A stretch of DNA of 64,000 nucleotides, taken from Haplodiscus bocki. Lineage: Eukaryota. Every line of letters starts with the position of its first letter. Position 1 is the first letter of the stretch. Of this stretch, positions 32,991-55,450 are shown piece after piece. The stretch lies in NCBI GenBank assembly GCA_965655095.1, contig OZ296649.1, forward strand, positions 58,962,001 to 59,026,000, in the 5' to 3' direction. Position numbers and translations under genes: made by a program. The notes beneath the pieces are model-generated. The model searched no databases, had not been told where the DNA came from, and saw only the letters and a list, made by a program, of their open reading frames with translations.

Positions 32991-34871
32991 AGGAGAAGGA
33001 TCGGCAGGATCAATGAGAACAAACTACAAGTTTTACGCGTAGACTGTCTGTTGCTTCAATTTTGAAGAGCAACTTTCAAATACATTGCTTTCAGTTCAAC
33101 ACTGGAGGCGCAAAAATATCACTGATGAGGAGTTTTCACCTTGTTCGCAAAAGTCGTATTTCAATAATGATTCTGGCACTTTTACAATTGAAGTACAATT
33201 GATATTCAATTTGGGCGCAACGACAGTACGATGGTTAGATTTCAGTTACCAGCCAGAGATTCCTCGGGATGTCTCAATTCATGAAGTATTCCAAAGGTGT
33301 TGGTAATGTCAAAGCCAGTTTTGATGTATTTTTCAAGATGCTTTAGCGGCTGAACTTCTTGCAATTGCTTTCATTTGACTTAGAACATTGTTTTTCAACT
33401 ATCCGATTTTCTTTTTGATCATTTTCAATCTCACCATAGTCTTCCGAGTATTGTTTTTTGCAGAAAATTTCTGATTTTCACTTTAGATTTTTAGAACAGT
33501 TGAGTTGTACACAAATGATTTTTCAATTTAGTTTTTTGTTTGATTGGGTGGCATTGTTGTTTTCATCTTTGTTTCTACATCTATTGGTCTTTCCATGGTT
33601 TTTACGAAGAACTGATTAAAAAAACTTCAAATATCTCTCTGCAGTTACTTTGCATTTGTTAGAAATTTTTCATTTAAAAATTTTTTTTTGGAGACGCAGT
33701 TGATTCTTTTCAACAACAATTCTTAGGCGATTATTTTCCAGTTTTTTTCTTGCGTCCTGTCATTAACATGTTGACATGAAGTTTGTAATTAACTGAGGAG
33801 AGCTTGAGATACCATAATGGAACACCTAAATGTGTTTGAATCACAATTTCTTCGGTCTTGATATTCACTTCTCTCTAAACTACCAGAGTCACTGGTAAAG
33901 TATTAATTTAGTATTCGGTACCAAATATTACTTTTCAGAGCTCTACTGCTCGAGTTCCGACGTGAAGGCAGTTTAGTGGGATCGCTCATTGTTAGCGTAA
34001 AAACGGATTCAAGCATCCGAGTCAAAAAGAGAATTTGACGAGTTCAAAAAAGCATCGATGGTGAAACTCCAAAAAAGGTTGTTTTGGTCCTTCAAGATCC
34101 AATGTGTAGTAGGCTCCCGGAGGCTGATTTATCATCAAGTTTGGAAAACTTTGGCTACCTGCAGTTTGGAGTTAAGCTGGAAAGCAAGTTGCTTAATGAG
34201 CGTTTTCCGATGACCCTCAGTTACGCCCTGCCATTCTGCTGAAAGATCTTGGGCCTAGACAACCCAAAGATGGATAGTCCAAGTAGCAGCAGGCGAGAGA
34301 CTGTTTATGGCAAAAACCCAAGCTTGGAACTCATTAGGCGACTTTTTTCAACTAGCCGGGAACATTATTCAAAGAGATATAGTGTCATGTCATTGACATT
34401 CCTGGCTTTGAATTTATTTGAGAACCACATGAGACACCCTTATAGAACACCCAAAGATTTTAATTCATAGTTTGTTCGTTCTCGTTGTTTTCATCTCTTC
34501 TCTCTAATCTAGCACAGTCGCATGTAGTGAGTTTTTGTTTAGTCTTTGGTACCAACTGAACATTTTCAAAGCCTTCCCGGTCAAATTCTGACATCTTGTC
34601 CTCTGATCTAACCTAATTTTTGCTTCACTCAACTTAGCTTTTTTAACTCGTTTCTTACGGCTCAACCACTACTTATACACTTAATCCTGATTCGTATTAT
34701 CCTTAATCCTTATGGAATTTTTCTTTGAGTTTGAACAAGTACTTGGAAGTGTTTTGGTGGTGACGGCGATACCAACAGGCATGCTTTTTGCAATTGCTTC
34801 TTCGAGATGCTGCTTCACGTTCAAACTTTGCCTGAAGCAACGAAATAATTTAGATCTGTCTGTAACATCCC

Positions 34872-35277
34872 TGTAACATTGCGTGCTATGGTGAAACTAA
34901 GGCAGAAAAGACTTATCTAAAGAATGTGCACATCAAAACGTATCTTTAAAGGAGATATGAACTCTGCACTTTCCGGAGTGTAACCGGCACTTTTTTTAAG
35001 ATAACCTACTCCCTCTCCTCAATAGTGAGACATTATTTAGTATCAATAGCTTAAATTCTTAGTTTAAGGACACAATAAATTTGCGGAATCTAAGTGAAAG
35101 TTGACTTAAACTAACAAAGTTTCTTTTCTGAGACGGGCTGTTGAGTTACCACTGGTAGCAAGTCTAATCGCGGGACCTCGCAGCCACTACTCTCATGAAC
35201 AATCTGAAAGTATTGAACGTTAAAATTCGCTCCGGCTACGAAGAAGAACATCTAGAAGTAGATTCACTTACATTGGA
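34872..35277 (+). mobile_element. Solo LTR (family A) inserted in a Gypsy gag, with 5-bp TSD ATCCC
   Basis: Starts TGTAA, has TTACA near the end and AATAAA at ~35073. ATCCC lies at 34867-34871 and 35278-35282. Removing the insertion restores in-frame gag LSVTSLCDRFCNP. Homologous to 36863-37797 and 51381-51786. Confidence 0.85.
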
Positions 35278-35368
35278 ATCCCTTTGTGACCGTTTTTGCA
35301 ATCCTCATGCACAAGGATTACATATTTTGTAACTTGAGTACCGGAAATTTGACTCAAAACGGACAATC

Positions 35369-36120
35369 GCTATCAAATATGTCTTGATATGATTGCAACT
35401 AAAGCAAGGCAATAGTCCTGCCTAGCAACTCTTTTTTCTAAAGATAGCGTTGAAGCTCTAGAAACTTGCGAAACTGAGCAAATAATACTACTTTCGACGG
35501 AAAAAGCTTTCGACGGAAAAAGCTGAGAACTTATGCTATGGAGCTTGGCTCATTACTTCAGCTACAACACCATGTACTCTATACGAATCGGATATCAAAT
35601 CTACCACATCTGGAGTTATTAAATATCGGGGATGCCGAGTCTATATAATCACTTTGAAGTGCGCAGGGCAATTGTCGTCCTCATCAAGATTAGATCGGAC
35701 GTCAGTATTTGTGAACAACTTCCGGCTATCAAAGTCAATGTAAAAGTTCCAGATCCTTTAAAAAAGTTATGGAGTAAATAACCCGCAATTGATGACATGC
35801 CCTACTACTCTACGAAAACAGAGGAAGGAGTTGCTTCACTAAAAGAAGGCCGTGAGCACTTACTTGAAAGTCCTAAAATGCGCGACCCGAGAAAAACTTC
35901 GATATTGCACGCCCGATTACTTCGAAGATGACTCATGACTCATCTGCGCCCATCGCTCTCTAAGGTGTTTGAATCCCACCTATCTATAAAACATTCTTTG
36001 ATATTGAGTTTGATTTCATTCATTGGTTTTATGCTACTTCATGTCATTGTTGTTTGGTTGTATCACCGTTATAAACTTCGCCACCTGACTACTCGACTTT
36101 GGTGTAGTCTCTTGTCCTAA
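35369..36120 (+). pseudogene. env: env-like envelope glycoprotein C-terminal portion, decayed
   Basis: Cys-spaced ectodomain remnant (RYQICLD..SCLATLF..ETCETE..WLITSA..GCRVYIITLKC..SICEQLP) followed by a hydrophobic TM segment HSLILSLISFIGFMLLHVIVVWLY and a basic tail HRYKLR. Lies upstream of a PPT and an LTR. Confidence 0.55.
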
Positions 36121-36862
36121 AACGCCAAAAGACAACAATTCTCGCAAAACTCCGGCGCGAACATGTGTTAATGAAAACAAAGTAGGCTCAGCCAGTGCAC
36201 CTTCCCCTGACTACTCAGAAAAGGTCAGAGCACTCTCTCGTTCTCTATCAGAATCTTCTTTAAGGGAGAAGACTATGATTTCAGCCTTAGGCTAATTTCA
36301 TGGTACTGCACCAAGCTTGTCGGAGTGGAGCAAAATCGAGCTCAAAGTCAAATTGATGAGCTCCTGCGGTTTCTATTGGAGCGCAAACGTAACGTCTATC
36401 GAGCAGCAAGCTCTTTTGACCGGAAACAGAAAAAAAATGAGTTTCTTAACCACGCTAGGTCTTTTCAAACAGATGGAAAAGGAACCAGAACATTTTTTTG
36501 CCAGCTGATTGTCATCGTCAAAAACGTTTTTATTTTTTATGCACTGGAATTATTTTCACTTTCGTAACTGTAGTGCAAATAAATTTGAAATATAAAAGCT
36601 TCTTGGGATTGGACGACTGTGTTGGCAACAGTACGACAACTCTTCTGGATTCTGCATATTCATTTTTGATACTGACTCTGCTAATGGAACTATTCTCAAC
36701 TCCTCAAAGACGTTTTTGGATCGAATTGAACCTTTTGGCTTCGGAATATCGATTTTTTTATGCCACTCTGGAGATGGCTGTTCTGCATCTGAGACACCTG
36801 CCTTCCTTCGCCTTGTTGCAAATGATGACGAACCAACGGCGAATTGACGGAAACGAGGGTAG

Positions 36863-37797
36863 TGTAGAATTGGATAATGTGGTGAAACTAAAGCAGAAAA
36901 AACTTTTCTAAGGAATGTGCCCATGAAAACGTATCTTTAAAGGAAATATGAACAAAATATGAACTCTGCTCTTTCGGGAGTGTAACCGGCGCTTTTTTCA
37001 AGATAACCTACTCCCTCTTCTCAAAAGTGAAACATTATTTAGTATCAATAGCTTAAATTCTTAGTTTAAGGACACAAGAATTTTGCGTATTCTAAGTGAA
37101 AATTGATTCAAACTAACGAAGTTTCTTTTCTGAGACGAGGTATTGACTTGCCAATGGTACCGATTCTAATCGTGGGACTTCGCATCCAATACTCTCATCA
37201 ACAAGAAACCCGGCTATCCCAGGGATATTTTGCGCATTCCAACATTGTTAAGGATGCCTTTGAGGAGCATGAAGGCCTTTTTTTTGTCAAAATAATCTGT
37301 TTCTTCATGTTTTCTAATTTTTCCAACCTTAATTTTTTCTGATTTTCGCCAAAAAACCTCTAAACTAAAGTGGAAAGACATTTTCAAAAAAAATCTTTTG
37401 ATACGCGTTCTAGAAAAATTTTGCCACATGTAGCGATTTCGAAAATTTTCAAGTTTGTTTTTCGGAAAAACCTGTATTTTTCGATAAAAACCCCAAGTCT
37501 TCCAAATTTCGAACGTTTTGAGTTTCATTCTATTCCAGTCGCATTCCACGCTAAGTTTGCTACACTTTGTTTAAAAAAATAAGTCAGTTTCAGACGTCGC
37601 CAAAGTTACCGATGTTGGCGTGAACGCAACAGGCAAACACCGGGTGAGAAAAACGTCAGTAATAGCCCATTCGAGGTTAAGATTTTGCTTCCATAGTTTG
37701 ATATATGGCGCAAAATGACTTTTCAAAAAAAAATTGGAACTTTAAAACCCGCTCCGGCTCCGAAGGAGAGTGTCTAGATATAGATTCACATTCATTA
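36863..37797 (+). mobile_element. Solo LTR (family A, diverged copy) with nested HINE-like insertion
   Basis: 36863-37200 and 37730-37797 align with 34872-35277. Flanked by GGTAG (36858-36862) and GGTTG (37798-37802), a 1-mismatch TSD. Confidence 0.75.
37200..37730 (-). mobile_element. HINE-like repeat, copy 4, inserted in the solo LTR
   Basis: Colinear with 7668-8250 and absent from the homologous LTR copies at 34872 and 51381. Confidence 0.8.
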
Positions 37798-37802
37798 GGT
37801 TG

Positions 37803-38174
37803 TGCCAGTTCGTGTGCGACGACACGCTACACAGTCAAAACCAGCAGCAGCACAACACAACTGGATCCACTGGTTGGTCTGAAATTTAACATACAGGACA
37901 ATACGATCTTCTCAGAACAACAAGAAGCCTACATCCTATTGCTGAATAGAATAACCTAGACAGACGCCTACAACCATTTGGAGAAGGAATGGACAAGACA
38001 CGTACTTGAGCTAAAGCAATCCTATGATGCAGAGAGCCGCAATCCCAATATTCTGTCAATCCTATTCTTATCCTAACCCAGGACGCTTAATTTAGATGCA
38101 GTAAATCGATAGTTGCGCTCCGATTGTTTTGATAACGATTGTTTTCATCATGCATCTTGAAACCACAGATTTCA
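37803..38174 (+). mobile_element. Putative LTR of the macrodomain-bearing Gypsy element
   Basis: Once the solo LTR is removed, the purine tract GGAAACGAGGGTAG abuts TG (37803). The segment ends TTTCA and is followed by TTGG (PBS position), ~150 bp before gag. No second copy in the window confirms it. Confidence 0.45.
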
Positions 38175-38317
38175 TTGGGAAGAATGACCCAAATTGATAA
38201 GGCAGTATTTGTGATTTTTCTTTCATTTTCCCTCATTACTTTTTGAAACTGAATCTTTTCACTAGGTTCTCATATTTCGGAAAAATCTCGCGAACCGTAA
38301 CGACGTAAATTCGGCTA

Positions 38318-39580
38318 TGAAAATTGCAGTACAATCAACAGTATCTCTTCCAAAATACGGAGGAAGTTCAACTGACAATTGGACTGACATTGAGTCTTCG
38401 ACGGATAGTTGATGTTACAGCAATCTAAGCTAGTCAAAGAGTAGGAATCTTGAAACTTCACTTGAGAGATCCAGCATTACGGTTTATCCACACATTAGAT
38501 TGAAACACGAAAGCAGACTTAGAGCTAACAATCACAGCCATGAAAAATCATTTTTGCAACCCGAATTTGAGAGAAATTCATCATATAAACTTAGAAAACA
38601 TGAGATTTAACCACAAAACAGTATCCTGAACAATGTCTGGTGAAACTTCAAAATCTAGCGATGGAAGCTTATCCAACACCAGCAGATCAACCAGTGGCAC
38701 CGGTTTAAACTAGTGTAAAAAATGACCAAGACAGATGCGATCGGGAAACGAGAGAAAATGACACTTGGAGAATTTTTGCCCAGATGGAACGAAATTGACA
38801 GATAATTAGATTGTTCAAGATTGCAATGCCCATTTTCAAGGGACTTTAACTTTTAGAAGAACCGGAGAATTCCACAATCAATGTTTTGTGCACAAAAGCT
38901 AAGCGAAAATTTGTTTTGAGAGAGCAATGCCCAGTAGATGACTGGTTTAGAGACGGATTTACTGAGTTGAGTACAGATAAGTCCTAGAAATTCCAAATGG
39001 TCACGACCAAAATGACAGAAAACCGAAACTCTCTTAAAGAGACATTCCATGCCTTCACTGAAAAAATTACTCAGCCTCAACAAGGAACATTGAGCCAAAA
39101 CACAAGCGAAAATTTTAAATCACAACAAAAATGGAGAGGAAATTTAAGCGGATGCTTAAATCGATATTGTCGAAACAGAGGATCCTATAATAATCAAGGA
39201 TCGAATAGCAACAGTACCAAAATCACAACCAAGGAAGATGCGGGAATAATTTTACCGGAAATTTTCGCGAGAGAAGTAATTATAGAGGAAACAATTACAG
39301 AGGGAACATTCGTGGAAATTTTTCAAACACTGACAACAGATACACTAATTTTCAACAAGATGATAGTCAAAATTCTGGAACGACACTAAACACAGGAAAT
39401 GTGGAAGGACATATTGAAAGAACAGCATTCTCAAAAGGTTTGCTATTCTTGTGGTTATACTAATCACACATCAAAATTTGTGAAGCGAGAGGAAGAAGCA
39501 GTTCACGAGGTGGACAAGTTCCATTCAACTCCCAGACAAAGAAACTCAAAACTCCACTCACGTCAGCTAGCTCAGAAGCG
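38318..39580 (+). pseudogene. gag: Gypsy gag, decayed
   Basis: SLPKYGGSSTDNW...LHLRDPALRF...HFCNP, an N/Q/R/G-rich low-complexity region, and a zinc knuckle CYSCGYTNH (~39440). Homologous to the gag at 51200-52870. Confidence 0.75.
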
Positions 39581-39739
39581 TCTAACCTTTCGAATTCAAT
39601 GCATTACTCTGAGCACCATTATCTAAATGTTTTCTCACCAGAGCCAGACTTATGAACCAAGAATCAGCTGTAGGAAAACTCTATCTTTAATATGGATGAA
39701 TCTCATCATCCAGTAAACTTAGAAATGAACGCGGTCATG

Positions 39740-42700
39740 TCACTTGATGGGGAAAATTGATGTAATTATCGGGTTACAGTTTGAAAATGACGTCAAGAGG
39801 AAAGCATTAATTGATAGAGGAGCTTGTGGTAACGCCATGCAGGATTTTTATGAAAAAGTGGAATATCGTCGATTTCACTCAGAAATACAGCAAGCTCGTT
39901 TCTTAAATGTCAAAGTAGCATCAGGGCCCTTTTTTAAAGTTCTCGGCCAAATTGACGTCAAATATAAATTTCATGAGCATTATTTTGAGGATACATCCTT
40001 CATACTTCCCTCTAAGATTAGTGTTGTAGGCAACCCATTCTTTCGAAAACACAGTTTTGACTTTATTCCTGCAGAAAACTTACTTATACTATCGGGAATG
40101 ACTTACGAATTGAATGAAAAAAACCCTGGCGAAGGACCTAGAACTTCCGAAAAAACGTTTTGATGAGCCAGAAAGTTTTAATCAGGCCTCTGCATCAGGA
40201 AATTCTACAGACAAAACCAGATTTTTGGAAAAACCTCGATGGAAACACTGGATTGATTATCCCAGGTGACGATCCCGAAAATAGTACAGAATTGAGACTT
40301 TAATCATCTGATCTCACAGCTGCAAAGCACTATAAAGTTTCAATTTTAGCAATCAATTTGAATGACCACGCTGTAACTTTCACAAAAAACAAACAGGTAG
40401 CAGATTTCCAATTTCTCTCCACAAAAAGAGGAGAACTTAATTGGAATCCCACCAGAATTTTTAGCACTTGACTAAGCGAAAAATGGAGTTTTTTTCTGCG
40501 TAATTGATCAACTTATTCGAGTGGGAAAAACGAGCAGGAAAGCAACCTAAACGCCCTCTTCCAGAATTTGACAATCTGGTATCCTGCGCCAGAAACATGT
40601 CAAAATCCTGAAAATCTTTTTACCTTGCAGAGGAATTTTTTTGACAACATAGCTGAATTGCAAAAACGATCTTCTAGGTCTGGGAAATAACGAAACCGAA
40701 GAGGAAACCTTCGAAATGGAAAGGTTTTCAGTTGAGTAGTGCGACATTTCGGCGAAACATAGATTTGATGTTGGATACATTACAGAGTTGAAACTTGAGG
40801 TGAAACTAGCACATGATTTACCTGTTCATGTACAAAGTGCCCCCCACCCCAATTCACCTGCGAGATGAAATTCTGGTTGAATTAGCTCCAATGCAATAAT
40901 ATGGCATTGTCACTTTTCCGAACTCTGAGTATTGTAGTCCAATCTTTGCACAACGAAAGCCATGAGAAAAACTGGGACTATTGATCAATTTGAAGCGTGT
41001 TAATCACCTTCTTCGAATGATTACAGCGACCACAGTTTCCCCATTTCGAAAATGACAGATGCCGCTCGTCATTTTGCCAGACAGACTTTGTTTACCAAAC
41101 TAGGTTGTCCACACGTTTATCTTTGTATGCAAATGGCTGACTCCTTATCAGTCCAACTCTTGTCTTTCAACTTTGCCTCGAGAGCATATGCCTATTCAAG
41201 ATTAGCTCAAAGTTTGAACAAATCAGTGACCGGATTTAGCTCATTTGCCACATCCTATCTTGATGCTTGCCTTGCGGCCAACTTATGTACACAATTCATG
41301 GATGATATCGGATGTGGAGTGGAGACATTTGTCCCCGCACTTAGACAAATTTTTGATTTTTTGTGAAAATCAGGACTTCGGTTGACACCTCATAAATTTG
41401 ATTTCGGCATGACCTCGATAAACTTCTTCGGCGACACGATCAGCTCGAAAGGACTTAAACCGGAAACTAAGATAGTGGAAAAAATTTCAAGAACTATGAA
41501 ATTAGCGGCAACAGTTAGACAACTGAAGAGATTGGTCGATTGGTTTTGTTTCATCGTACATTTTTGCCTAATCTTGCTCAAAATTTGATGCCTTGGTATA
41601 AATTATTTCGGTCAGATGTTGACTTTTCCTTGAGTGACGATCATTTAAAAAGTTTCGCAACAATAAAGGCCTTTTACAAGCTACAACAATCACTCAGGCT
41701 AACGAAGACTCGAGAACAATGTTATTTTATGTGATGCATGTTATTGCAGTAGTGGATTCGTTCTCATGATAGACGGCCAGCTCAAACAGAAAGACGGGAA
41801 GCCGAAACAAGCATACACACCAGTTCCGTTTGGCTCCTAATTTTATAACTCGAGTCAATTAAAAATGTCTACCTTTTGTTAAGAAATTTTAGCACTTTTT
41901 CGCTAAAATGCTTTTCCTATTTTATCTGGGATGCAGAAAAAGCGGTGATAGTTTTGACGGATAGCAAAAGTCCAACTAGTTTTTCCAGTCGAAACGACTG
42001 CATCCATCATTACGGAACATTATGAATAGAGTGATCGCTTATAACATAGTCTTAGCGCATATACGTGATCGAGCAATTATAGCGACAGATTTTCTGTCAA
42101 AAATGCAAACTGATCCAAGTCAGATCTTGGAACTGCAATTGCTTGACTCAATTCCAATGAAACATATTGATATGTTCCAATTAAACAAAAGCTAAAACAC
42201 CCGATGGATCTTTGCTGTCGATCGAATCGAGAAGCGTCTTACATGAAACAAAACAACCGCAAATACAACAAGGTTTACTGGAACAGTTACAAGCTAACGA
42301 TGCCTCGCCCAATTTTGTTCGTAACCTGAACGACATTCTTGAGAGTGCTTAACCAAAGGAGACCATTGAACTTTTTGCAGTAAAATGAACGCCTGAAATT
42401 AATTTAGTTCAAGGAAATGACCCATTGAATTTTTTGAACATCGAAATCGAATACACAAGTAATAGGCTTTCAGACAGAGAGGAAAAATGATCAAGCCTTC
42501 CGCAAAGTTAAAGCCTGGATTCAAAACGGATGCACAGATGATATTACATGTGCATCATTTAAACTGAAAAATTACCATATGCACCTATCGCGTTTGCAAG
42601 TACAAAAAGTATTCCTTACTCATCTTTTTTTGACAGAGTCGGACAGATTTACCATCATCATGTGTGCGATCAGCTACATTTGAGACAAGAAGTTATATAT

Positions 42701-43760
42701 GGAATTCACTACTCACCAACAGGTGGCGACATCGGCATTGTCCGAACCGCCCAAGAGTTCCACAAGAGATTCTACTTTCCGGGATCCTCTGAATTCCTCA
42801 TGGATTACATCAAAAATTGTCGCTCTTGTTCGACACTGAAAAAAATCAACATGAAGCAACTGAAACCTCCTTTGCAGCCAATCAATTGGAACATTTTTTT
42901 CCGGGAGAAATGATGCAAATTGACTTGAGTGGTCCTTTCCAATCACCGATTTACAAGTATGCTCCCTCGGGCATTGATGTATTTTCAAAACACCCGTTTG
43001 CGGTTTCGCTAACACCGGTACATGCCGGAAGCGTTGGTAAAGCATTGGTTTCAATACTTTTTCAACACAGTTACATTCCTACGACAGTTCTCTCGGACCT
43101 GGAAACAAGCCTCGTAGCAAAATTACAGCATGAATTGACTGATTTACTTGAAATTCAATTACAACACGCTTCTTTGAAACATCCACAGACCATTGGAGTA
43201 GTTGAACGCTCATACTCGGCGTTGAAACGTACTCTCAAACCTAATACGGACGAAGATTGGACTACATGGTATCGGTATGTTGACCTAGCTACGTTTTTTC
43301 ATAACACTTCTGACCATTCATCGATTGGATGTGCCCTCAGCTCATTGTTTCACGGCATAGACCCAGTCAAACCTAATGAATTGCGGTTCCGGAGCCATGT
43401 TATAGCGAAAAAGAACTCACGTCAGAATATTCAGTAGATTTGCAATGTTGCTGCTTCCCAGACGCAAAATCGAGACTGCTCGATGCATATCATAAATACC
43501 GTACCTACTATATAAAGGCAGCAGCAAAGGTGTTGGCTAACCAGGAGTATTGCTTACTGTTGAATCCTTCGTTGCTTCCGCAGAATGACTTTGCTGCGAA
43601 ATCGACAATCATCTGTCTCTCATTGTTTAAGTTGAAAAAGTTGTCACAAAATCAAACTACTTAGTTGGAAAGGTCGGTACGCCCTAAACTTAATGTGTGC
43701 ATCGCATTAGACTGCGACAGTTGAGCCTAAAAATCAAGCTGAGGCTATATCTTTAACAAC
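39740..43760 (+). pseudogene. pol: Gypsy pol (protease-RT-RNase H-integrase), multiple stops and frameshifts
   Basis: Protease ALIDRGA; RT SEYCSPIF, FTKLGC..VY, QFMDDI; RNase H MCDA...GFVLM; integrase H..GG.IG...C..C, QIDLSGPF, VLSD, HPQTIGVVERS. The PR-RT-RH-IN order is Ty3/Gypsy. Confidence 0.92.
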
Positions 43761-43864
43761 AGATGAGTTTCGGCCTGATCCAATTGCGTTCCGAGCTTGA
43801 AATATTTGAGTCAGCGCTAGAGCAATCATTTGAGGATACCGCATTTTAACTAACTCATCCTCAA

Positions 43865-44428
43865 TTGTCGAAAAAAGAGCACGATGAAGCTCAATACAAT
43901 ATAGGAGGAGCAATTGCTGGTCCAGGGGTTGCCGTGCCCGCAGCTATTGCCCCAGTAGTTGGACCCCATGATGCACCAGCGCAAGTTGACGCACCACAGT
44001 GTAATTCTGGGGCAGGCGGAAGCCCCTCGTTCCCAACACCACCCGCACCTGAGCTAGAAAATCCGGTAGAATTGGAAAACCTATTTTTTCCTGAACCTAA
44101 TCAACAACTGACACCGGCTCATGTACACAACAACAATTCACAAGCGGGTGTGCCTGCGCAGGGAACCGTGAATGCTTCCACTGCACTCGTTCAGCCTAGT
44201 CCTCCTTTTGCATTCGCTCGGCGGACTGACGCTCGTTCGCAAGGTCATACACAAGGCCATGCTACGGTAACACGAACAGGTCCGCAGCCTCCGCGCATTT
44301 TATTTGATTGCTACGATCATGATAGGGTCATCCTTACTAGACAACAATTGACTGCCGATGCTTACTACGAGTATTTGGCTCAACAATCTGCGCTACCGCA
44401 AACACGTGACGAAGACATTAGCACTTGA
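43865..44428 (+). CDS. Pro/Ala/Gln-rich low-complexity ORF, likely integrase C-terminal linker
   Basis: 187 open codons rich in P/A/Q directly after integrase and before the macrodomain. Confidence 0.5.
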   Translation: MSKKEHDEAQYNIGGAIAGPGVAVPAAIAPVVGPHDAPAQVDAPQCNSGAGGSPSFPTPPAPELENPVELENLFFPEPNQQLTPAHVHNNNSQAGVPAQGTVNASTALVQPSPPFAFARRTDARSQGHTQGHATVTRTGPQPPRILFDCYDHDRVILTRQQLTADAYYEYLAQQSALPQTRDEDIST

Positions 44429-44639
44429 AAGTCCTTGCTCAATGAACTCGGAAACAGCTGGTCACCTCAAAAAATCCGACGGCGGATTTTCACAAAACTC
44501 CCGAAAAATCTATTTTGAAAAAGCCATACCCTGATAGATCAAATATAGGACAACGGGGTCCTTCTTCTGATATCTATTCGGCAACATTTCAGCTGAATCC
44601 GAATGATGCTAATCAGACTGACATCATTGAGTTACCTCA

Positions 44640-45075
44640 CAGCATTCACATCTCAGAAGGTGACATTTTTAGTGATCCTGAAGGAAATTTCGCACATTGC
44701 TTTTTCTCTGATTTAGCAATGTCTGCAGGGATATCAACGCAGTGTCTTCACATTTTTCCAGACTTCACTGAAATACGCAAAACTCGGAAATTTTTACCTC
44801 CAGATTTTTTAATCGCACATTTTAATCTTTTGCCTAACAATTGGATAAACAATTTAATCACGAAATGGACATGATATGACAAGCCAAAATACTCGGACCT
44901 GGACAAATGCTTTTGCCGAATGAAAAGTCATATATTGCAACATCATATTAACGAAATTCGCTTACTTCAAATTGGATGTGGACTTGACAAACTGGAATGG
45001 AACCGAGTTCTGCAGATAATTATAGCAATGTTTGGCAATTATGACATTGACATTGACATTTTCCTTCTCCGAGCT
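44640..45075 (+). pseudogene. TARG1/OARD1 (Poa1p-like) macrodomain, ADP-ribosylhydrolase family, element-encoded; one in-frame TGA at 44872
   Basis: ISEGDIF...FAHCFFSDLAMSAGI...NLITKWT*YDKPKY..L..C..RMKSH...IRLLQIGCGLDKLEWNRVLQIIIAMF aligns motif for motif with TARG1 (GDLF, LAHCIS.D..MGAGIA, LITK, KPTY, MKSH, IGCGLD.L.W). ORFs 44515 and 44920 are in the same frame. Confidence 0.9.
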
Positions 45076-45448
45076 CCAACCAGCCTTAGTCCGGCAAATC
45101 TTAATGGCAGAGGAATATTCCTCAGATGAAGAAACGCCAAGACTTGTTCGAGAAATGAGTAAGACGTCAATACCCTCCCACGACTGACCGAAATGATCGT
45201 GAGACACCGAGCTGAGATACGTCACACAAGTTGACTTGTTTGCCTGATTATACTTATCATAATTTTGACTAGAAATCTGATAAATTTGACTGGTGTTTAC
45301 CTCAAGTAAACGTTTAAAATTATTTGTTGTCAACCAATTCTTATTACAAGTCGTCAATCACTACTTACGAGGTGTCAACTAGAGTGCAGAGTTCAAGAGT
45401 AATTAACTCATTGCATCTAAGATTTATACGATTTTCCCACGACAGAAA

Positions 45449-48322
45449 ATGAACAATCTATTTTGGGGTTTTCCACACCGAACTTTCTCTTGCAATTTTT
45501 TCAAAATTTTACTATTAAACATAGCCGGCACATTAGTGTTCAACCTACAACGGTCCGTCTGTACCCTGAGCGCTGGCAAAGTCAAGTGTTTACGGACGAT
45601 GAAATTGATGGAGTTCCGCACAAATTTGAATTGGATAGGTGTCCTTGATTCATTACATCAACATGCTGATTCGGACTGCCTCCATCAATTCCCACAATGG
45701 CTTATCGATGATGAGCATTCGCAACGGCGCACATTTTTCTTCACGGTTTTGTAAATTGACACCTGATATCGCATAATGAATTTGGATGAATTATCATTTA
45801 TCTCATCAGCCTCTATAGAAAAACACTTTCCGCTTCTCTCCTCAGTCTCACATTAGATATTCAACGTATGCAAAAACCATGAGTCGTTGTTTCGGAGAAT
45901 TCCAATCAGTGGATACATTTGTGAATTTCATGGTGCTCCCGTTGTCTGGAGAGTGACCCCTTCATACATAAGCCCCCGAGTGGACTTGGAATCCGTTACT
46001 GGAATCAAGGAACCATCATATACAAAGATTTTGAAAATTCACAGGAATGGAGCACACTCATGAGTGCCGCAGCTCTCCTTGGTCATGATTTCAACGTTGT
46101 TGAAGAACTCTGTCAACTCGGTCTGGTTGGCACGACAATTCAGGTGCCGTTTTTAATTTTCGGAAACACATTATGCTGTCACGATTTTGATCACTTCTCT
46201 AGCCAGGACTATCTGTCACTGAATTTCCATACTCTAGTTGTTATATATTTGTAACTTGCACCTGGTTTTCGAAAAAAGTTTTTTAATTGTGTCACGCGGT
46301 ATCAGTTTCCAACATCCATTTTGAAAATCGTAGGTTTTAGTTCATTTATTCGGAAAAACTTCCGCTCTGGCTGCACTTTTCATTGTTTAAAGAGGAAAAT
46401 TCTCATCTCCCGTTAGGTTTTCTCGCCCATATGAGAAAGATTCATAGCCCTCGTCATTGTAGCCTTCTCTCAAGCGTTTACTAATAATTTCGTGACGTTT
46501 CAGTTTTTGACTTTGTACCAAGTAAACTGGCTGTATTACCATGAATTCTCCGAATGTGGAGTCTTCCGACGGGTTCAACTGGTCGGTACTAGCGCTGATT
46601 GTGGTTACCCCCCTTTGGTCTTAACGTTCTGCCGATGGAGTTACAGACATTTACCAAATTGGAACGACGCCGTTCTCCCCAACACCGGAATGAAATAATG
46701 GCGTGTCTCGTCAAGTATTCAGGAACGAGCAGCCAGGACTCTCATCGACTTGCTGATGCTGAATATTTTTTAAGCGCACTCAATGACCGGGCAAGAACCG
46801 CCGATAGCATAACTCTTTGTTGAGTTTTTGATCAAATTGAAATGTAAGCAATGAGAGATATTTATAGTCCACAGTTAATATGTTTATTTTGTCTGATTAA
46901 ATTGACAGCAATGAAAGTTCTGAATTTTTTAAATCAAGGCCTAACCAACAAAAACGTGGGCTTTTTCGCCATTTTGCGCTCAACTTAAACGAAACTGGAA
47001 AAACTATCCCCAACGTTAGATAGCCCTAGGTTTTGTTACCCTACGTGGAGAATATCAGTATCCTATCTTGTGATCCCTACAAACGGTACGAAAACTTCAC
47101 TCCTGAAGTAGTGAAGGCTACAGACTTCATTTTCGCAGATTACAATTTTTTGCAAAAAGATTGCACAAAAGAACCAGTTGGACCATTGTGGAATTTTTTT
47201 CAATTAACCGCACTTGTATTGTGTTTTCCCCTTTATCCATCTAAATTTTTGCATGACTTTGGCTTTATTCTTCAAAGGTTTTCGTTTCTCAATTTCTGAA
47301 TGGAAAGAAGGCCTCACAAAATCCCGGATTTTTTTCTTGGGTATGCAATTTCGCCTTGAACACAGTTGCAGGCTCCCCTGAACAGCTAAACTTTGGGAAA
47401 AACCGTTCAAGGACTGGCTCACACCATTCGTACAGCTTTCAAGGAAGAGACACACGTCTCAGACGCCAGCATCTCCTTCTTCAAGGAAGTGAAATTCTGC
47501 ATAACACCCTCACCTAAAACAAACGCAGGGAAAAAACAAGACCGATAACAAACACTGTAACTGACCTAGTGCGAAAATGAGCAATGGAAAATGGTTTTGG
47601 GTACCGTCCGTCTGGTAACAGTATGCACCTGCTGGCGGAATAAGGATGGTTATCATTAGTCCGTTGTTTGAAAATGTATGTTCTCACAGTTTTCCACCGG
47701 GGGGGGGGGGGGGGGCGAGAGATTGACATTGCCTTCCCGAGATATCATCATCCGACATGCCAATCTCCCCTGCGTTACACTTTTCCAAATGAACCAGACA
47801 CGTCAAGCGTTTTCATACGCCAAACAGTTTACGTAAAGATGCCCCCTTAGAGGAAAAGTCGGTGAATTGAACTACGATCAACTTGTCATTGATACCCTTT
47901 GCTTTACCGCAGCCATCCCTCGTTTTCCGAATTGTCTAATATGGAAAGGCCCAACCCGTCCGGGGTACACGTTCTTAGAAAGCACATTTACTTCAAATTG
48001 ACACCTCGTGGGGCCACTATCACTGATTTGAATGTACTAGATTACAGTCCAGGTCATCAATCTCTTTTGAACTGGTTTGCGCCATATTCATAGGAGCCCA
48101 ACGTGGGAAAGATACACGTACTCGCCCAGGTATACAAAATGGCTGATTCTTATCTTTGATTCCTCCCACGGTAGGTACCTTCTGGTCATACCTACCTTCG
48201 ACGCTGCGTTTCCGAGAAGCAACTTGACTTCGGCAAAATTTTGCATCATTTCTGAGAATACCTAGGTCTGTTTGAACCCCCCTTGTGAAGATCTGAGTCA
48301 ATCCTTGAGTGAAACGCTAACG
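45449..48322 (+). other. Extended 3' internal region of the Gypsy element with decayed orphan ORFs
   Basis: Chain of plus-strand ORF pieces (45449, 46060, 46492, 47033, 47668, 47899) with no domain I recognise. No 3' LTR is seen before the duplication breakpoint. Confidence 0.35.
47699..47715 (+). repeat. Poly-G tract (17 G)
   Basis: Directly visible in otherwise AT-rich sequence. Confidence 0.95.
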
Positions 48323-51300
48323 AATCAAACCTAGGATTCCCTGCCCTTTAAAACATTGCAATGTTCCTAATGACCTTTGAACCATTTAAACTATTTGGTC
48401 ATTCTGTTTATTTTAATAAAGAAAACTTCAGTCTTAATTACAAGCTCAAGAGAGAATATAACTACTGCGTGGTTCGTTTTTTTTTAACTAACCGAAATCT
48501 AGGATTGCGACCCAAGCTCCGAAGTTCTTGTTCCGCTCGCCAATACTGTCTTCTCCAAGATTTAATGACAATCAAGACCTGAAATTCAAATTTTTGAGTT
48601 GGTGACAGTTCCGAAACAATCCTGATAATGCAATACAGAGAGAAACTATCCTCCAGATAGATGGCAAACTTTTGCTCCCTACCAACCACCCGCTGCCATT
48701 CGTTCACGTCATCCACCAAACCCTGTCAACCGTCATCCACACCTGATCCAGTTGCACGTCATCTACATCCAGATCCACGAACCTGTAAAACTAAAATTTT
48801 GTCTTAACAACTCCCCCTTACAGATTGTAAAGAATCAACGTGATTTGGGTCTTACGCTCAACTCATTGCTCTCCTGGTCGAATAACTGTGGAACAAGACT
48901 TCAGAAAGGCTGGCGTGCGTTCTATTTTGTGAAGAGAATTTTTTCGCCTACTGCCACTGAGCAAACAAAGTCAAACGTTTATCCTGGCTATGTGTTTCTT
49001 ATACTCAAGTCTAGAGATTTTTCTAGTCAAGTGAAAATAATGCCTCTGTCGATGTACTTTGAACTTCACTTCATGACCTTTTCCTAATATCAGTGATGGG
49101 AGGCAAGTACAGCATCGGCACTTGTAGGGCATTATCAATCGCTGCAGGTGCGAGAACTCTTCAGTCAGCGGTAAATGAATTTATTATCCCTTAGACCCGA
49201 CTGAAGAGATGTGACGAAAACTTTGTGGTTCTTGCAGCCATCTTATTCAACGTTATGAGACGCCGCCTAATCAAAAGAAATGAAACGTTGATGAATAAGA
49301 AAACGATAACTGCAGTTTACTGGTAGTACTTTCGGAACTTTTCTCAAGTAGAATGTCATGTGCACTTGGAGATTTTACTGTCACTGCGGAGACTGCAAGA
49401 TACACTCAAAACTGACATACTTGTGCCTTGTTGGAAAATACTGGGTGAAAACCGATGGGCTCAAAACCTAAAGACTTTACTAGTACTACTAATACTAAAA
49501 CAGGAGAAGGATCGGCAGGATCAATGAGAACAAACTACAAGTTTTACGCGTAGACTGTCTGTTGCTTCAATTTTGAAGAGCAACTTTCAAATACATTGCT
49601 GTCAGTTCAACACTGGAGGCGCAAAAATATCACTGATGAGGAGTTTTCACCTTGTTCGCAAAAGTCGTATTTCAATAATGATTCTGGCACTTTTACAATT
49701 GAAGTACAATTGATATTCAATTTGGGCGCAACGACAGTACGATGGTTAGATTTCAGTTACCAGCCAGAGATTCCTCGGGATGTCTCAATTCATGAAGTAT
49801 TCCAAAGGTGTTGGTAATGTCAAAGCCAGTTTTGATGTAATTTTCAAGATGCTTTAGCGGCTGAACTTCTTGCAATTGCTTTCATTTGACTTAGAACATT
49901 GTTTTTCAACTATCCGATTTTCTTTTTGATCATTCTCAATCTCACCATAGTCTTCCGAGTATTGTTTTTTGCAGAAAATTTCTGATTTTCACTTTAGAAT
50001 TTTAGAACAGTTGAGTTGTACACAAATGATTTTTCAATTTAGTTTTTTGTTTGATTGGGTGGCATTGTTGTTTTCATCTTTGTTTCTACATCTATTGGTC
50101 TTTCCATGGTTTTTACGAAGAACTGATTAAAAAACTTCAAATATCTCTCTGCAGTTACTTTGCATTTGTTAGAAATTTTTCATTTAAAAATTTTTTTTGG
50201 AGACGCAGTTGATTCTTTTCAACAACAATTCTTAGGCGATTATTTTCCAGTTTTTTTCTTGCGTCCTGTCATTAACATGTTGACATGAAGTTTGTAATTA
50301 ACTGAGGAGAGCTTGAGATACCATAATCGAACACCTAAATGTGTTTGAATCACAATTTCTTCGGTCTTGATATTCACTTCTCTCTAAACTACCAGAGTCA
50401 CTGGTAAAGTATTAATTTAATATTCGGTACCAAATATTACTTTTCAGAGCTCTACTGCTCGAGTTCCGACGTGAAGGCAGTTCAGTGGGATCGCTCATTG
50501 TTAGCGTAAAAACGGATTCAAGCATCCGAGTCAAAAAGAGAATTTGACGAGTTCAAAAAAGCATCGATGGTGAAACTCCAAAAAAGGTTGTTTTGGTCCT
50601 TCAAGATCCAATGTGTAGTAGGCTCCCGGAGGCTGATTTATCATCAAGTTTGGAAAACTTTGGCTACCTGCAGTTTGGAGTTAAGCTGGAAAGCAAGTTG
50701 CTTAATGAGCGTTTTCCGATGACCCTCAGTTACGCCCTGCCATTCTGCTGAAAGATCTTGGGCCTAGACAACCCAAAGATGGATAGTCCAAGTAGCAGCA
50801 GGCGAGAGACTGTTTATGGCAAAAACCCGAGCTTGGAACTCATTAGGCGACTTTTTTCAACTAGCCGGGAACATTATTCAAAGAGATATAGTGTCATGTC
50901 ATTGACATTCCTGGCTTTGAATTTATTTGAGAACCACATGAGACACCCTTATAGAACACCCAAAGATTTTAATTCATAGTTTGTTCGTTCTCGTTGTTTT
51001 CATCTCTTCTCTCTAATCTAGCACAGTCGCATGTAGTGAGTTTTTGTTTAGTCTTTGGTACCAACTGAACATTTTCAAAGCCTTCCCGGTCAAATTCTGA
51101 CATCTTGTCCTCTGATCTAACCTAATTTTTGCTTCACTCAACTTAGCTTTTTTAACTCGTTTCTTACGGCTCAACCACTACTTATACACTTAATCCTGAT
51201 TCGTATTATCCTTAATCCTTATGGAATTTTTCTTTGAGTTTGAACAAGTACTTGGAAGTGTTTTGGTGGTGACGGCGATACCAACAGGCATGCTTTTTGC

Positions 51301-51877
51301 AATTGCTTCTTCGAGATGCTGCTTCACGTTCAAACTTTGCCTGAAGCAACGAAATAATTTAGATCTGTCTGTAACATCCCTGTAACATTGCGTGCTATGG
51401 TGAAACTAAGGCAGAAAAGACTTATCTAAAGAATGTGCACATCAAAACGTATCTTTAAAGGAGATATGAACTCTGCACTTTCCGGAGTGTAACCGGCACT
51501 TTTTTTAAGATAACCTACTCCCTCTCCTCAATAGTGAGACATTATTTAGTATCAATAGCTTAAATTCTTAGTTTAAGGACACAATAAATTTGCGGAATCT
51601 AAGTGAAAGTTGACTTAAACTAACGAAGTTTCTTTTCTGAGACGGGCTGTTGAGTTACCACTGGTAGCAAGTCTAATCGCGGGACCTCGCAGCCACTACT
51701 CTCATGAACAATCTGAAAGTATTGAACGTTAAAATTCGCTCCGGCTACGAAGAAGAACATCTAGAAGTAGATTCACTTACATTGGAATCCCTTTGTGACC
51801 GTTTTTGCAATCCTCATTCACAAGGATTACATATTTTGTAACTTGAGTACCGGAAATTTGACTCAAAACGGACAATC
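48323..51877 (+). repeat. 3.55-kb direct duplication, copy 2
   Basis: See 31812-35368. This copy continues seamlessly into gag at 51878, whereas copy 1 jumps into env-like sequence. Confidence 0.98.
51381..51786 (+). mobile_element. Solo LTR (family A), duplicated copy with ATCCC TSD
   Basis: Near-identical to 34872-35277, with the same TSD. Confidence 0.85.
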
Positions 51878-54777: not shown

Positions 54778-55450
54778 ACAATACGGCCGGCTACCACCGG
54801 CATATTTTGCGCCTTCCCATTTGGGTAAAAGTGCAGTTTTAAAAGATGAAAACGTTTTTTTCGTCGCAAAAAATACGCTTCCTTCGTCATATCTTTTTTT
54901 TTGTCAGAAAGTCCTGATATTGAGGGCGGAAAAGACCTTTGTAAAGAAAAAATACCATTTGATACGCATTCTACAGCAATTTTGCCATCTTTATCAATTT
55001 TGAAAAAAAATCATTTTTTTTTTCGCAGAAAACCAATCTATTTTTCCAAAAAAGACCCTAAATTTTGAAAGTTATGAGAATTCTTGCTATTCCAGTCGCA
55101 TTCTACGCCAAATTTGCTACCTTTAGCGATTTTAAAAATTTCATTTTTTTTTCGAAAAACCCATTACTTAAAAAAAACCCAAATTTTGAACGTTTTGAGA
55201 ACTTTCATTATTTCAATCGCATTCTACAGCAACTTTGCTACAATTTGATGAAAAATATTGATATTCAGACACGTGAAGAAGCGATGTTGGCTCGTTTACG
55301 CGAGCTCAATTGGCAAGCATCGTGTAAAAAAAACGCACCTATTTGAGAGGAAGAGTTTGCTTCCCATATTTTTAACCACATAAACAATGTCTTCATCCGG
55401 GCGATAACCGGAGCAGTTCGTAAGGAAACATTGATTTGAAAGTTTTTTTC
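54777..55450 (-). mobile_element. HINE-like repeat, copy 5, with expanded internal tandem array
   Basis: Perfect hairpin GCCGG-ctacca-CCGGC near the aacaa end, and three gcattctac-anchored ~120-130 bp units (~54967, ~55098, ~55219). Confidence 0.75.

What the first reader, a model, noticed from the sequence alone, without database searches (positions are those of the whole stretch)
43865..45129. Gypsy LTR retroelement carrying a TARG1/OARD1-type ADP-ribosylhydrolase macrodomain behind integrase
Seen: directly after the integrase and a 187-codon Pro/Ala linker, on the same strand, is a complete macrodomain broken by only one in-frame TGA. It retains the LITK lysine and GCGLD aspartate. Established: these match the catalytic Lys/Asp pair of human TARG1. 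TARG1 and the related bacterial DarG remove ADP-ribose from acidic residues or from thymidine in DNA, and RNA viruses use macrodomains against PARP-based defence. Macrodomains are already known from some retrotransposons, so the domain alone is not unprecedented. Inference: here it sits where chromoviruses carry a chromodomain. It may be an integrase-fused module that either erases host ADP-ribosylation of element protein or cDNA (anti-defence) or steers integration to ADP-ribosylated chromatin. This copy is dead.
Basis: partly seen in the sequence, partly recalled or inferred. Interest (0 to 1): 0.85.

Follow-up and report, generated by a model that had tools for sequence, protein, structure and literature searches.

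The report
Dead Gypsy retroelement with TARG1-type macrodomain
A decayed 15-16 kb Gypsy-type retroelement once made its integrase as one protein with a TARG1-like enzyme domain that removes ADP-ribose, and intact relatives elsewhere carry the same domain, which suggests that retroelements, like RNA viruses, fight ADP-ribose-based host defence.

Summary
Window 44635-45080 (+) encodes a full-length OARD1/TARG1-type macrodomain. It has one in-frame TGA (44872-44874) and keeps the catalytic Lys (LITK) and Asp (GCGLD). It lies downstream of a Ty3/Gypsy integrase on the same strand.

It is not a one-off host retrocopy. Two other copies (L002, L003; 62-68% nucleotide identity, each with its own LTR pair) have the same gag-PR-RT-RH-IN-linker-macro order. 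Every junction from integrase to macrodomain is open in at least one copy, so the ancestor most likely made them as one Pol protein.

Macrodomain pN/pS between copies is 0.45-0.59 (95% CI below 1). Frame-shifted controls give about 1.0-1.4. All three copies are dead.

Public collections also hold uninterrupted Gypsy Pol reading frames with this macrodomain, after IN, between RH and IN, between PR and RT, or before PR. One also carries Tpt1/KptA.

The most likely role is an ADP-ribosylhydrolase carried in Pol that reverses host ADP-ribosylation of element proteins or nucleic-acid ends. That role is inferred, not shown.

I found no paper describing this in Ty3/Gypsy elements. The only precedent found was macro ORFs in fish retroviruses.

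The parts
35367..36651 (+). Remnant of the 3' internal region (C-terminal part of ORF3) of an upstream tandem or permuted partner of the same family
   Evidence: Colinear with L003 16404-17651 and L002 16236-16899, which lie just upstream of their 3' LTRs. Conserved at protein level.
36849..36862 (+). Purine-rich polypurine-tract-like run directly before the LTR
   Evidence: Same context as before the 3' LTRs of L002 and L003. Assigning it as a polypurine tract is inference.
36863..37204 (+). LTR, main part (starts TGTAG...). It serves as the 5' LTR of the gag-pol copy.
   Evidence: 85.5-85.8% identical to the LTR copies at 34889-35202 and 51398-51711. Aligned with the LTRs of L002 and L003.
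37205..37734 (.). Unrelated ~530-bp repeat inserted into the LTR
   Evidence: 76.6% identical to window 7668-8192. It interrupts the LTR alignment.
37735..37798 (+). 3' terminal part of the same LTR
   Evidence: Aligns with the LTR ends at 35220-35276 and 51729-51785 and with the L003 5' LTR end.
37806..37820 (+). Conserved block just after the LTR, a primer-binding-site candidate (CAGTTCGTGTGCGAC)
   Evidence: Conserved at the same place in L003 and partly in L002. The primer-binding role is inference.
38400..39623 (+). gag remnants with a decayed CCHC knuckle (39399-39623)
   Evidence: Position in the element. Weak zf-CCHC_4 match, E=0.036. Similar to L003 at protein level.
39729..40160 (+). 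Aspartic protease region (LIDRGA)
   Evidence: Motif and position. 47-54% identical to the other copies, pN/pS 0.47-0.54. No Pfam hit.
40700..42200 (+). Reverse transcriptase (FMDDIG) and RNase H, in several frames
   Evidence: Window 41004-41363 is 66-68% identical to the L002 and L003 stretches. The L003 stretch overlaps an ORF with a recorded RVT_1 hit. pN/pS 0.24-0.41.
42563..42910 (+). Integrase H2C2 zinc-binding domain (frame 2)
   Evidence: Pfam PF17921, E=2.7e-10.
42793..43434 (+). Integrase catalytic core (frame 1)
   Evidence: blastp to the rve regions of P0404, P0398 and P0400, E=1e-8 to 1e-10. pN/pS 0.22-0.31.
43380..43849 (+). Integrase C-terminal module. Frame 3 to ~43640, then frame 2 with four in-frame stops.
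   Evidence: Aligns with the uninterrupted ORFs L002 8428-9048 and L003 8756-9475.
43850..44425 (+). Linker (frame 2): Pro/Ala-rich first part, conserved FDCYDH motif near its end
   Evidence: Continuous with the integrase C-terminus in a single ORF in L003 (8756-9475). pN/pS 0.58-0.80.
44446..44634 (+). Pre-macro segment (frame 1)
   Evidence: Open into the macrodomain in the window. Its junction with the linker is open in L003 9337-9699.
44635..45080 (+). TARG1/OARD1-type macrodomain. TGA at 44872-44874. Lys of LITK just before the stop. IGCGLD in the C-terminal half.
   Evidence: pN/pS 0.45-0.59 with CI below 1.
45081..45187 (+). C-terminal tail of Pol (acidic AEEYSSDEE; frame 2 after a frameshift near 45090) and the Pol stop
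   Evidence: Conserved tail in L002 and L003, which end 50-65 residues after the macrodomain.
45407..46740 (+). Conserved region downstream of Pol, content unknown. Homology to L003 ends near 46740.
   Evidence: tblastn blocks shared with L003 and L002. No Pfam family. pN/pS 0.75.
34872..35276 (+). Solo-type LTR of the same family inside the duplicated segment 31812-35368
   Evidence: No polypurine-like context upstream and no gag downstream.
51381..51785 (+). Second solo-type LTR, inside the duplicated segment 48323-51877

Best explanation
The macrodomain is the C-terminal enzymatic domain of the Pol polyprotein of an old, now extinct family of large (about 15.6-15.9 kb) Ty3/Gypsy LTR retroelements. 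The host is an unidentified, probably marine invertebrate genome.

Shown:
- The ancestral order was gag, PR, RT, RH, IN, a linker of about 330 residues, the macrodomain, and a short acidic tail. An unknown region and a third ORF (ORF3) followed before the 3' LTR.
- The macrodomain is of the TARG1/OARD1 (ALC1-like) type.
- It keeps the catalytic Lys and Asp in all three copies.
- It evolved under purifying selection while the lineages leading to those copies diverged.

Inferred: the domain worked as an ADP-ribosylhydrolase made and packaged with Pol. It would strip ADP-ribose that host PARP-type or TRPT1-type transferases put on the element's Gag, RT or IN proteins, or on the phosphorylated ends of its RNA or cDNA. 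That would keep reverse transcription and integration going. This is the retroelement counterpart of the macrodomains of RNA viruses.

The copy in the window is a fossil with no coding capacity.
For: Identity of the domain.

Part of the element, not a one-off:
- Window 37803-46685 aligns with L003 2787-11842 at 68.6%. Window 38332-45048 aligns in blocks with L002.
- Both loci have the same order with the macrodomain about 2 kb after the integrase zinc domain.

Independent insertions: within-copy LTR identity is 86-90%, while copies differ from each other by 32-38%. They therefore split before they inserted.

One ORF:
- The integrase C-terminus to linker junction is open in L003 8756-9475 and L002 8428-9048.
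- The linker to pre-macro junction is open in L003 9337-9699.
- The pre-macro to macrodomain junction is open in window 44446-44871.

Selection:
- Macrodomain pN/pS is 0.45-0.59, with bootstrap 95% CI of 0.32-0.78.
- The same nucleotides read in shifted frames give 1.0-1.4.
- By comparison, RT, RH and IN give 0.22-0.43 and the linker 0.58-0.80.

Catalytic dyad: kept in the three copies and in eight other retroelement macrodomains.

Generality:
- Uninterrupted Pol reading frames carry the same macrodomain after IN in P0114, P0394, P0400 and P0404. P0400's macrodomain matches TARG1 at E=8e-35.
- It sits at other positions in P0403, P0133, P0398 and P0029.
- 11 of the 79 best metagenome loci with this macrodomain have RT or IN beside it.

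Chemistry: TARG1 removes ADP-ribose from Asp/Glu and from phosphate ends of nucleic acids, using a dyad of Lys84 and an acidic residue at position 125 (PMC7050489).
Against: - No activity, substrate or host transferase has been tested or identified.
- The host genome is unknown, so the presence of antiviral PARPs in it is unknown.
- All three family members are dead, and no intact member was found among 1.84 billion representative proteins. The single-ORF claim therefore rests on combining junctions from different copies.
- pN/pS of about 0.5 is weaker constraint than on RT or IN. It includes neutral decay after insertion, and pS is near saturation.
- The macrodomain tree is unresolved. The source of the domain, and whether it was captured once or many times, cannot be stated.
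- The window copy lacks a regular 3' half and 3' LTR.
Confidence: 0.6

Rival explanations
1. The macrodomain acts as a reader rather than an eraser. Tethered to integrase, it binds mono- or poly-ADP-ribosylated chromatin, for example at DNA breaks or PARP1-marked sites. It would steer integration there, as the chromodomain steers chromoviruses to heterochromatin.
For: The domain lies C-terminal to integrase here and in P0114, P0394, P0400, P0404, L009, L039, L040 and L070. Macrodomains in general bind ADP-ribose, and the ALC1-like class includes readers (PMC7050489).
Against: The catalytic Lys and Asp are kept in every retroelement copy examined. In other lineages the same domain sits before PR, between PR and RT, or between RH and IN, where tethering to integrase after processing is not assured. 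A 330-residue, poorly constrained linker separates it from integrase in this family.
Confidence: 0.15
2. The domain belongs to a nucleic-acid or ADP-ribose-phosphate pathway rather than to protein de-ADP-ribosylation. Together with Tpt1/KptA-type or cyclic-phosphodiesterase-type partners, it would process 2'-phosphate or ADP-ribose adducts on the element's own RNA, primer or cDNA ends.
For: P0114 carries the macrodomain directly followed by a Tpt1/KptA RNA 2'-phosphotransferase domain in the same Pol. TRPT1/KptA ADP-ribosylates phosphorylated nucleic-acid ends (abstract of PMC10415124), and TARG1 reverses such modification (PMC7050489). Fish retroviruses are reported with either CNPase or macro ORFs (PMC4977317).
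Against: No Tpt1 or CNPase-like domain was detected in the window family. The link is seen in one protein only. This rival overlaps the best explanation and differs only in substrate and purpose.
Confidence: 0.15
3. The macrodomain was a separate accessory gene product downstream of pol, with its own ORF or splice product, and was not fused to integrase.
For: In the window the linker and the macrodomain are in different frames from integrase. Fish retroviruses are reported to carry macro domains as additional ORFs.
Against: Each frame change in the window is open in another copy. The L003 ORF 8756-9475 runs from the integrase C-terminal module into the linker, and 9337-9699 runs from the linker into the pre-macro segment. 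Intact relatives encode IN and the macrodomain in one ORF.
Confidence: 0.07
4. It is a chance passenger: a host OARD1 retrocopy or exon that landed in one dead element copy and has no function for the element.
For: The domain is about 44% identical to vertebrate OARD1 over its C-terminal half.
Against: Three independently inserted copies, 32-38% diverged, all carry it at the same place. pN/pS is well below 1. The DNA alignment between copies is continuous through the region, with no poly-A or duplicated flanks. The three copies form their own long-stemmed clade rather than nesting in a host OARD1 group.
Confidence: 0.03

Closest known systems
Human TARG1/OARD1 (C6orf130), ALC1-like class of macrodomain hydrolases
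   Same: Full-length colinear sequence similarity. A minimal macrodomain of about 145 residues. The catalytic Lys in (L/V/F)TK and the Asp in GCGLD align.
   Different: It is embedded in a retroelement Pol behind integrase rather than being a free cellular protein. About 44% identity in the C-terminal half. Broken by a stop in this copy. Activity untested.
Chromoviruses (Ty3/Gypsy elements with a chromodomain at the integrase C-terminus)
   Same: A Ty3/Gypsy Pol with an accessory chromatin- or modification-related domain added C-terminal to integrase.
   Different: No chromodomain was detected. The added domain is an enzyme with its catalytic residues retained. It is separated from integrase by a long linker. 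In other lineages the same domain sits elsewhere in Pol.
Macrodomains of positive-strand RNA viruses (coronavirus Mac1, alphavirus nsP3, hepatitis E virus, rubella virus)
   Same: A parasite-encoded macrodomain inside a replication polyprotein. Those macrodomains are held to counter PARP-mediated antiviral ADP-ribosylation (abstract of PMC7232374).
   Different: The best structural-database relatives here are TARG1 chains, and no viral macrodomain structure appeared among the PDB hits. From my own knowledge those viral domains are MacroD-type with a different catalytic mechanism; this was not tested here. The carrier here is a retroelement. Some alpha-like RNA-virus replicases in the databases do carry this TARG1-like type (P0399, P0402, P0405).
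Epsilon-like endogenous retroviruses of teleost fish with macro-domain or CNPase ORFs (Basta et al. 2009, as cited in PMC4977317)
   Same: A reverse-transcribing element that acquired a macrodomain.
   Different: Those are Retroviridae with additional ORFs. This is a Ty3/Gypsy element with the domain inside Pol. I could not read the original paper or compare sequences.
Bacterial DarG antitoxin
   Same: Same ALC1-like class as TARG1 (PMC7050489).
   Different: No DarG structure appeared among the PDB hits at the thresholds used, and I did not look for a DarT partner. The closest relatives are eukaryotic OARD1-like proteins.

Membership tests
TARG1/OARD1-type (ALC1-like) macrodomain hydrolase | Full-length macrodomain homologous to OARD1 | tested here: met
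   PDB phmmer E=3.6e-10 for the C-terminal half; the N-terminal half is colinear. 130.6 bits against an OARD1-like HMM, positions 5-146 of 159.
TARG1/OARD1-type (ALC1-like) macrodomain hydrolase | Catalytic lysine equivalent to TARG1 Lys84 | tested here: met
   LITK in the window, LVTK in L002 and FTK in L003 align with LITK of TARG1. Role of Lys84 from PMC7050489.
TARG1/OARD1-type (ALC1-like) macrodomain hydrolase | Catalytic acidic residue at position 125 (the Asp of GCGLD) | tested here: met
   IGCGLD, VGCGLD and LGCGLD align with GCGLD of TARG1. The review cited writes Glu125; the aligned human residue is D.
TARG1/OARD1-type (ALC1-like) macrodomain hydrolase | ADP-ribosylhydrolase activity | not testable with these tools
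   Needs biochemistry.
TARG1/OARD1-type (ALC1-like) macrodomain hydrolase | Intact reading frame in this copy | tested here: not met
   TGA at 44872-44874, with frameshifts on both sides of the domain.
Ty3/Gypsy (Metaviridae) LTR retroelement | Pol order PR-RT-RH-IN on one strand | tested here: met
Ty3/Gypsy (Metaviridae) LTR retroelement | Long terminal repeats flanking the internal region | tested here: met
   L003 2351-2781 and 17853-18275 (89.6%). L002 2383-2866 and 17482-17958 (86.4%). In the window only the 5' LTR is in place, and it is interrupted; the other LTR copies are solo-type.
Ty3/Gypsy (Metaviridae) LTR retroelement | Target-site duplication, primer-binding site and polypurine tract | tested here: inconclusive
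   A purine-rich run lies before the LTR and a conserved block after the 5' LTR. No clear target-site duplication was seen, and no tRNA match was tested.
Chromovirus | Chromodomain at the integrase C-terminus | tested here: not met
   No Chromo family hit in any piece from 43380 to 45184 or in the L002 and L003 equivalents.
DarTG toxin-antitoxin | DarT partner gene next to the macrodomain | not tested
   The context is a eukaryotic retroelement Pol. I made no specific search for DarT.
Env-carrying (errantivirus-like) Gypsy elements | Envelope gene downstream of pol | tested here: inconclusive
   A conserved ORF3 with a C-terminal hydrophobic anchor exists. It has no Pfam or PDB match.

The most novel reading that the evidence does not exclude
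TARG1-type ADP-ribosylhydrolase domains have been recruited repeatedly, at several different positions, into the Pol of Ty3/Gypsy retroelements of invertebrates or protists, and into some alpha-like RNA-virus replicases. In one case the domain is joined to a Tpt1/KptA transferase. This would mean that ADP-ribosylation of retroelement proteins or nucleic-acid ends is an old and widespread host defence against retrotransposition, and that retroelements carry their own erasers.
Probability: 0.35. Interest if true: 0.8.

Novelty: new variant of a known kind. Interest (0 to 1): 0.62.

Why it matters
Macrodomains that reverse ADP-ribosylation are established counter-defence tools of RNA viruses. For LTR retroelements, accessory domains fixed in Pol are considered rare (PMC9289625). 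I found no description of a TARG1-type hydrolase in Ty3/Gypsy Pol.

If the domain is active, ADP-ribosylation becomes a candidate restriction pathway against retrotransposons. The uninterrupted natural reading frames found here (P0400, P0404, P0394, P0114, P0403) would allow direct biochemical and genetic tests.

The different positions of the domain in Pol, and its pairing with Tpt1/KptA, also bear on whether the relevant substrate is protein or nucleic acid.

Tried and rejected
- Pfam on the separate pieces gave only a sub-threshold Macro hit (E=0.052) and nothing for the L002 and L003 pieces. The PDB search and a purpose-built HMM were needed.
- The first LTR searches failed because the search ranges were too narrow. 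The LTRs turned out to lie about 15.5 kb apart.
- Rfam found nothing in the window.
- A scan of metagenome contigs with the integrase core found no relative. An eight-sequence macrodomain alignment was too diverse for the scan.
- No intact member of this family appeared among the representative proteins. The two best hits were the L002 and L003 copies themselves.
- The macrodomain tree did not resolve the origin of the domain or the number of captures.
- Host identification reached only 'marine eukaryote, probably an invertebrate'. An eIF1 first exon is 63% identical to the Exaiptasia protein and 76% identical to a marine metatranscriptome protein.
- ORF3 and the region after Pol matched no Pfam family or solved structure.
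- Contigs carrying other macro-bearing Pols showed no LTR pairs within their lengths.
- Literature searches for macrodomains in Gypsy elements found nothing. Basta et al. 2009 could not be read.
- I did not fold the window's macrodomain. The tools take no read-through by reference, and I chose not to type a long sequence with X.
- Hypotheses considered and rejected: host OARD1 retrocopy, segmental duplicates of a single insertion, and chromovirus membership.
Full report
**What is at the coordinates.** On the + strand, frame 1 is open from 44446 to 44871 and again from 44875 to 45126. The only break is TGA at 44872-44874.
- The piece after the stop matches the C-terminal half of human OARD1/TARG1 structures (4j5q, 4j5r, 2eee, 2l8r, 2lgr) at E=3.6e-10 and about 44% identity, up to the last strand. 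IGCGLD lies on GCGLD.
- The piece before the stop matches the N-terminus of the same chains weakly but in register.
- Its equivalents in related copies match OARD1-like proteins at E down to 5e-12 in a set of 150.
- Read with X at the stop, the window's domain scores 130.6 bits against an HMM built from 33 OARD1-like proteins and covers positions 5-146 of 159.
- The equivalent piece of copy L002 aligns LVTK on LITK of TARG1.
- According to Rack et al. 2020, TARG1 works through Lys84 and an acidic residue at position 125. It removes ADP-ribose from Asp/Glu, from O-acetyl-ADP-ribose and from phosphate ends of nucleic acids (PMC7050489).

**The element around it.** Upstream on the same strand lie the following parts, in several frames and with many stops:
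- gag remnants
- a protease motif (LIDRGA)
- reverse transcriptase (FMDDIG)
- RNase H
- an integrase H2C2 domain (Pfam E=2.7e-10)
- an integrase core

The integrase core is in frame 1, the integrase C-terminus in frame 3 and the macrodomain in frame 1.

From the integrase core to the end of Pol, this copy needs about four frameshifts. It also has four stops between about 43685 and 43849, one at 44426, and the TGA. Pol ended about 35 codons after the macrodomain, in an acidic tail (AEEYSSDEE; stop at 45185-45187 in frame 2).

**Other copies.** A search of 1.84 billion representative proteins with the C-terminal piece gave 529 hits. The two closest short ones, P0001 and P0003, lie on two contigs of one ENA assembly (ERZ26859043, about 72x coverage). 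On both contigs the macrodomain follows RT and the integrase zinc domain on the same strand.

At the DNA level, window 37803-46685 aligns with L003 2787-11842 at 68.6%. Window 38332-45048 aligns in blocks with L002 at 64-68%.

The window's own RT ORF from another element is in the same collection, on a 123-kb contig, and its close relatives are all ENA contigs. The three copies are therefore probably from one genome. That is inference.

L003 and L002 each have a pair of LTRs about 15.5 kb apart, 89.6% and 86.4% identical. This gives an element of 15.6-15.9 kb. The two LTRs within a copy are far more alike than the copies are to each other. The copies are therefore separate insertions from lineages that had already diverged, not segmental duplicates of one event.

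**One reading frame.**
- L003 8756-9475 is a single 240-codon ORF. It runs from the integrase C-terminal module (KVNYLITEIGTPYTQCVHRVRLRPI) into the Pro/Ala linker.
- L002 8428-9048 does the same from further upstream.
- L003 9337-9699 runs from the conserved end of the linker (FDCYDH...) into the pre-macro segment.
- Window 44446-44871 runs from there into the macrodomain.

Every junction is thus open in at least one copy.

The stops inside the macrodomain are at different places in each copy:
- in the window, after LITKWT
- in L002, just before ILVTK
- in L003, two stops either side of FTKRR

I compared the copies and recorded where they are broken.

**Selection.** I used codon alignments taken from protein alignments and the Nei-Gojobori method.

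| Region | pN/pS |
|---|---|
| Macrodomain, three pairs (about 137 codons each) | 0.45-0.59, bootstrap 95% CI 0.32-0.78 |
| Same aligned nucleotides read one or two bases out of frame | 1.0-1.4 |
| RT, RH, IN | 0.22-0.43 |
| Protease | about 0.5 |
| gag | about 0.6 |
| Linker | 0.58-0.80 |
| Region after Pol | 0.75 |

Part of the divergence is neutral decay after insertion, so the true constraint was stronger than these values show.

All three copies keep the Lys and the Asp. In a domain tree they form one well-supported clade on a long stem (SH-aLRT 98). Their position relative to cellular OARD1 proteins is unresolved.

**Wider occurrence.** Long hits include uninterrupted Gypsy Pol proteins with the same domain.

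| Position of the macrodomain in Pol | Proteins |
|---|---|
| After IN | P0114 (followed by a Tpt1/KptA domain), P0394, P0400, P0404 |
| Between RH and IN | P0403 |
| After RH (partial protein, no IN present) | P0133 |
| Between PR and RT | P0029 |
| Before PR | P0398 |

- P0400's domain matches TARG1 at E=8e-35 over its full length.
- All of these proteins keep the dyad.
- A scan of metagenome contigs found 419 relatives. Of the best 79 loci, 11 have RT or IN next to the macrodomain on the same strand: five as IN-macro and six as RT-macro-IN.
- The window family's integrase is only 25-29% identical to those Pols, so it is a separate Gypsy lineage.
- The same macrodomain type also occurs in alpha-like RNA-virus replicases (P0399, P0402, P0405) and in a DNA-ligase-like protein (P0401).

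**Interpretation.** What is shown is an integral, once-selected TARG1-type domain of Pol. What is inferred is that it removed host-added ADP-ribose from element proteins or from nucleic-acid ends.

A chromodomain-like targeting role is less likely. The catalytic residues are conserved, and in other lineages the domain is placed away from integrase. That role is not excluded for the IN-fused forms.

The Tpt1/KptA partner in P0114, and the reported CNPase or macro ORFs of fish retroviruses (PMC4977317), point to a possible nucleic-acid or ADP-ribose-phosphate substrate.

**State of the window copy.**
- Its 5' LTR (36863-37204 plus 37735-37798) is split by an unrelated 530-bp repeat.
- Upstream of that LTR lie a polypurine-like run and a remnant of the family's 3' internal region (35367-36651). 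The LTR is therefore shared with a truncated tandem or permuted partner.
- Homology to L003 stops near 46740.
- Two further LTR copies (34872-35276 and 51381-51785) lack gag or polypurine context. They sit inside a 3,557-bp segment duplicated at 99.5% identity (31812-35368 and 48323-51877).

- The element is a provirus-like Ty3/Gypsy element in what is probably an animal genome.
- The N run at 19777-19976 was left alone.
- I took no contig for human DNA. One fetched locus (L049) is titled as a human gut metagenome contig, and I left it out of the comparison as a precaution.
- Human OARD1 appears only as rows and alignments printed by the structure-database search.

Noticed in passing
window 31812-35368 and 48323-51877: A 3,557-bp direct repeat at 99.5% identity, 16.5 kb apart. 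Each copy contains a solo-type LTR of the old Gypsy family. It is far younger than the element it brackets, so it may be a recent segmental duplication, a gene conversion or an assembly effect.
   Followed up: partly
window 31162-31310 (+): First exon of an eIF1/SUI1 gene (MATILNLASTKTDQAF...IHIRIQQRNGRKTLTTIQG). The rest of the gene was not found in the window. The closest named protein is from the sea anemone Exaiptasia (63%), and the closest overall is a marine metatranscriptome protein (76%). This is the only clue to the host.
   Followed up: partly
window 26135-29019 (-): An intact 394-codon ORF with a reverse-transcriptase domain, with a PHD-finger ORF next to it. There are many relatives at 71-94% identity (over part of their length) on other contigs of the ENA collection. 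This looks like a much younger, possibly active retroelement family.
   Followed up: partly
L002 14956-17113; L003 15148-17203; window 35371-36132: A conserved third ORF at the 3' end of the element with a C-terminal hydrophobic segment (HVIVVWxYHxYK). It may be envelope-like, but it has no Pfam or PDB match.
   Followed up: partly
window 45407-46740; L003 10460-11843: Protein-level conserved blocks directly after Pol (for example VQLVGTSADCGYPPLVLTF) with no known domain and weak constraint (pN/pS 0.75).
   Followed up: partly
window 44300-44400; L003 9400-9500; L002 9440-9540: A conserved motif of about 35 residues at the end of the linker (R-x-x-FDCYDH-x-R...T-R/K-x-Q-L...Y-x-Y-L). Its function is unknown.
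   Followed up: no
L001/L006 (P0114 residues 1171-1513): An uninterrupted Gypsy Pol reading frame in which the TARG1-like macrodomain is directly followed by a Tpt1/KptA RNA 2'-phosphotransferase domain. This is a possible writer/eraser or 2'-phosphate-processing pair inside a retroelement.
   Followed up: partly
P0399, P0402, P0405: Alpha-like RNA-virus replicases (methyltransferase, helicase, RdRp) carrying a TARG1-like macrodomain.
   Followed up: no
L004 960-20615: The contig with the macrodomain-bearing Pol P0394 also has a 1,234-residue gag-like ORF and a downstream ORF of more than 2,950 residues. This may be a giant retroelement.
   Followed up: no
window 37200-37716 and 7668-8192; also 37374-37580 and 54931-55258: An unrelated dispersed repeat (about 73-77% identity between copies). 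One copy is inserted in the Gypsy LTR.
   Followed up: no
window 19777-19976: A run of 200 N. It was left untouched.
   Followed up: no
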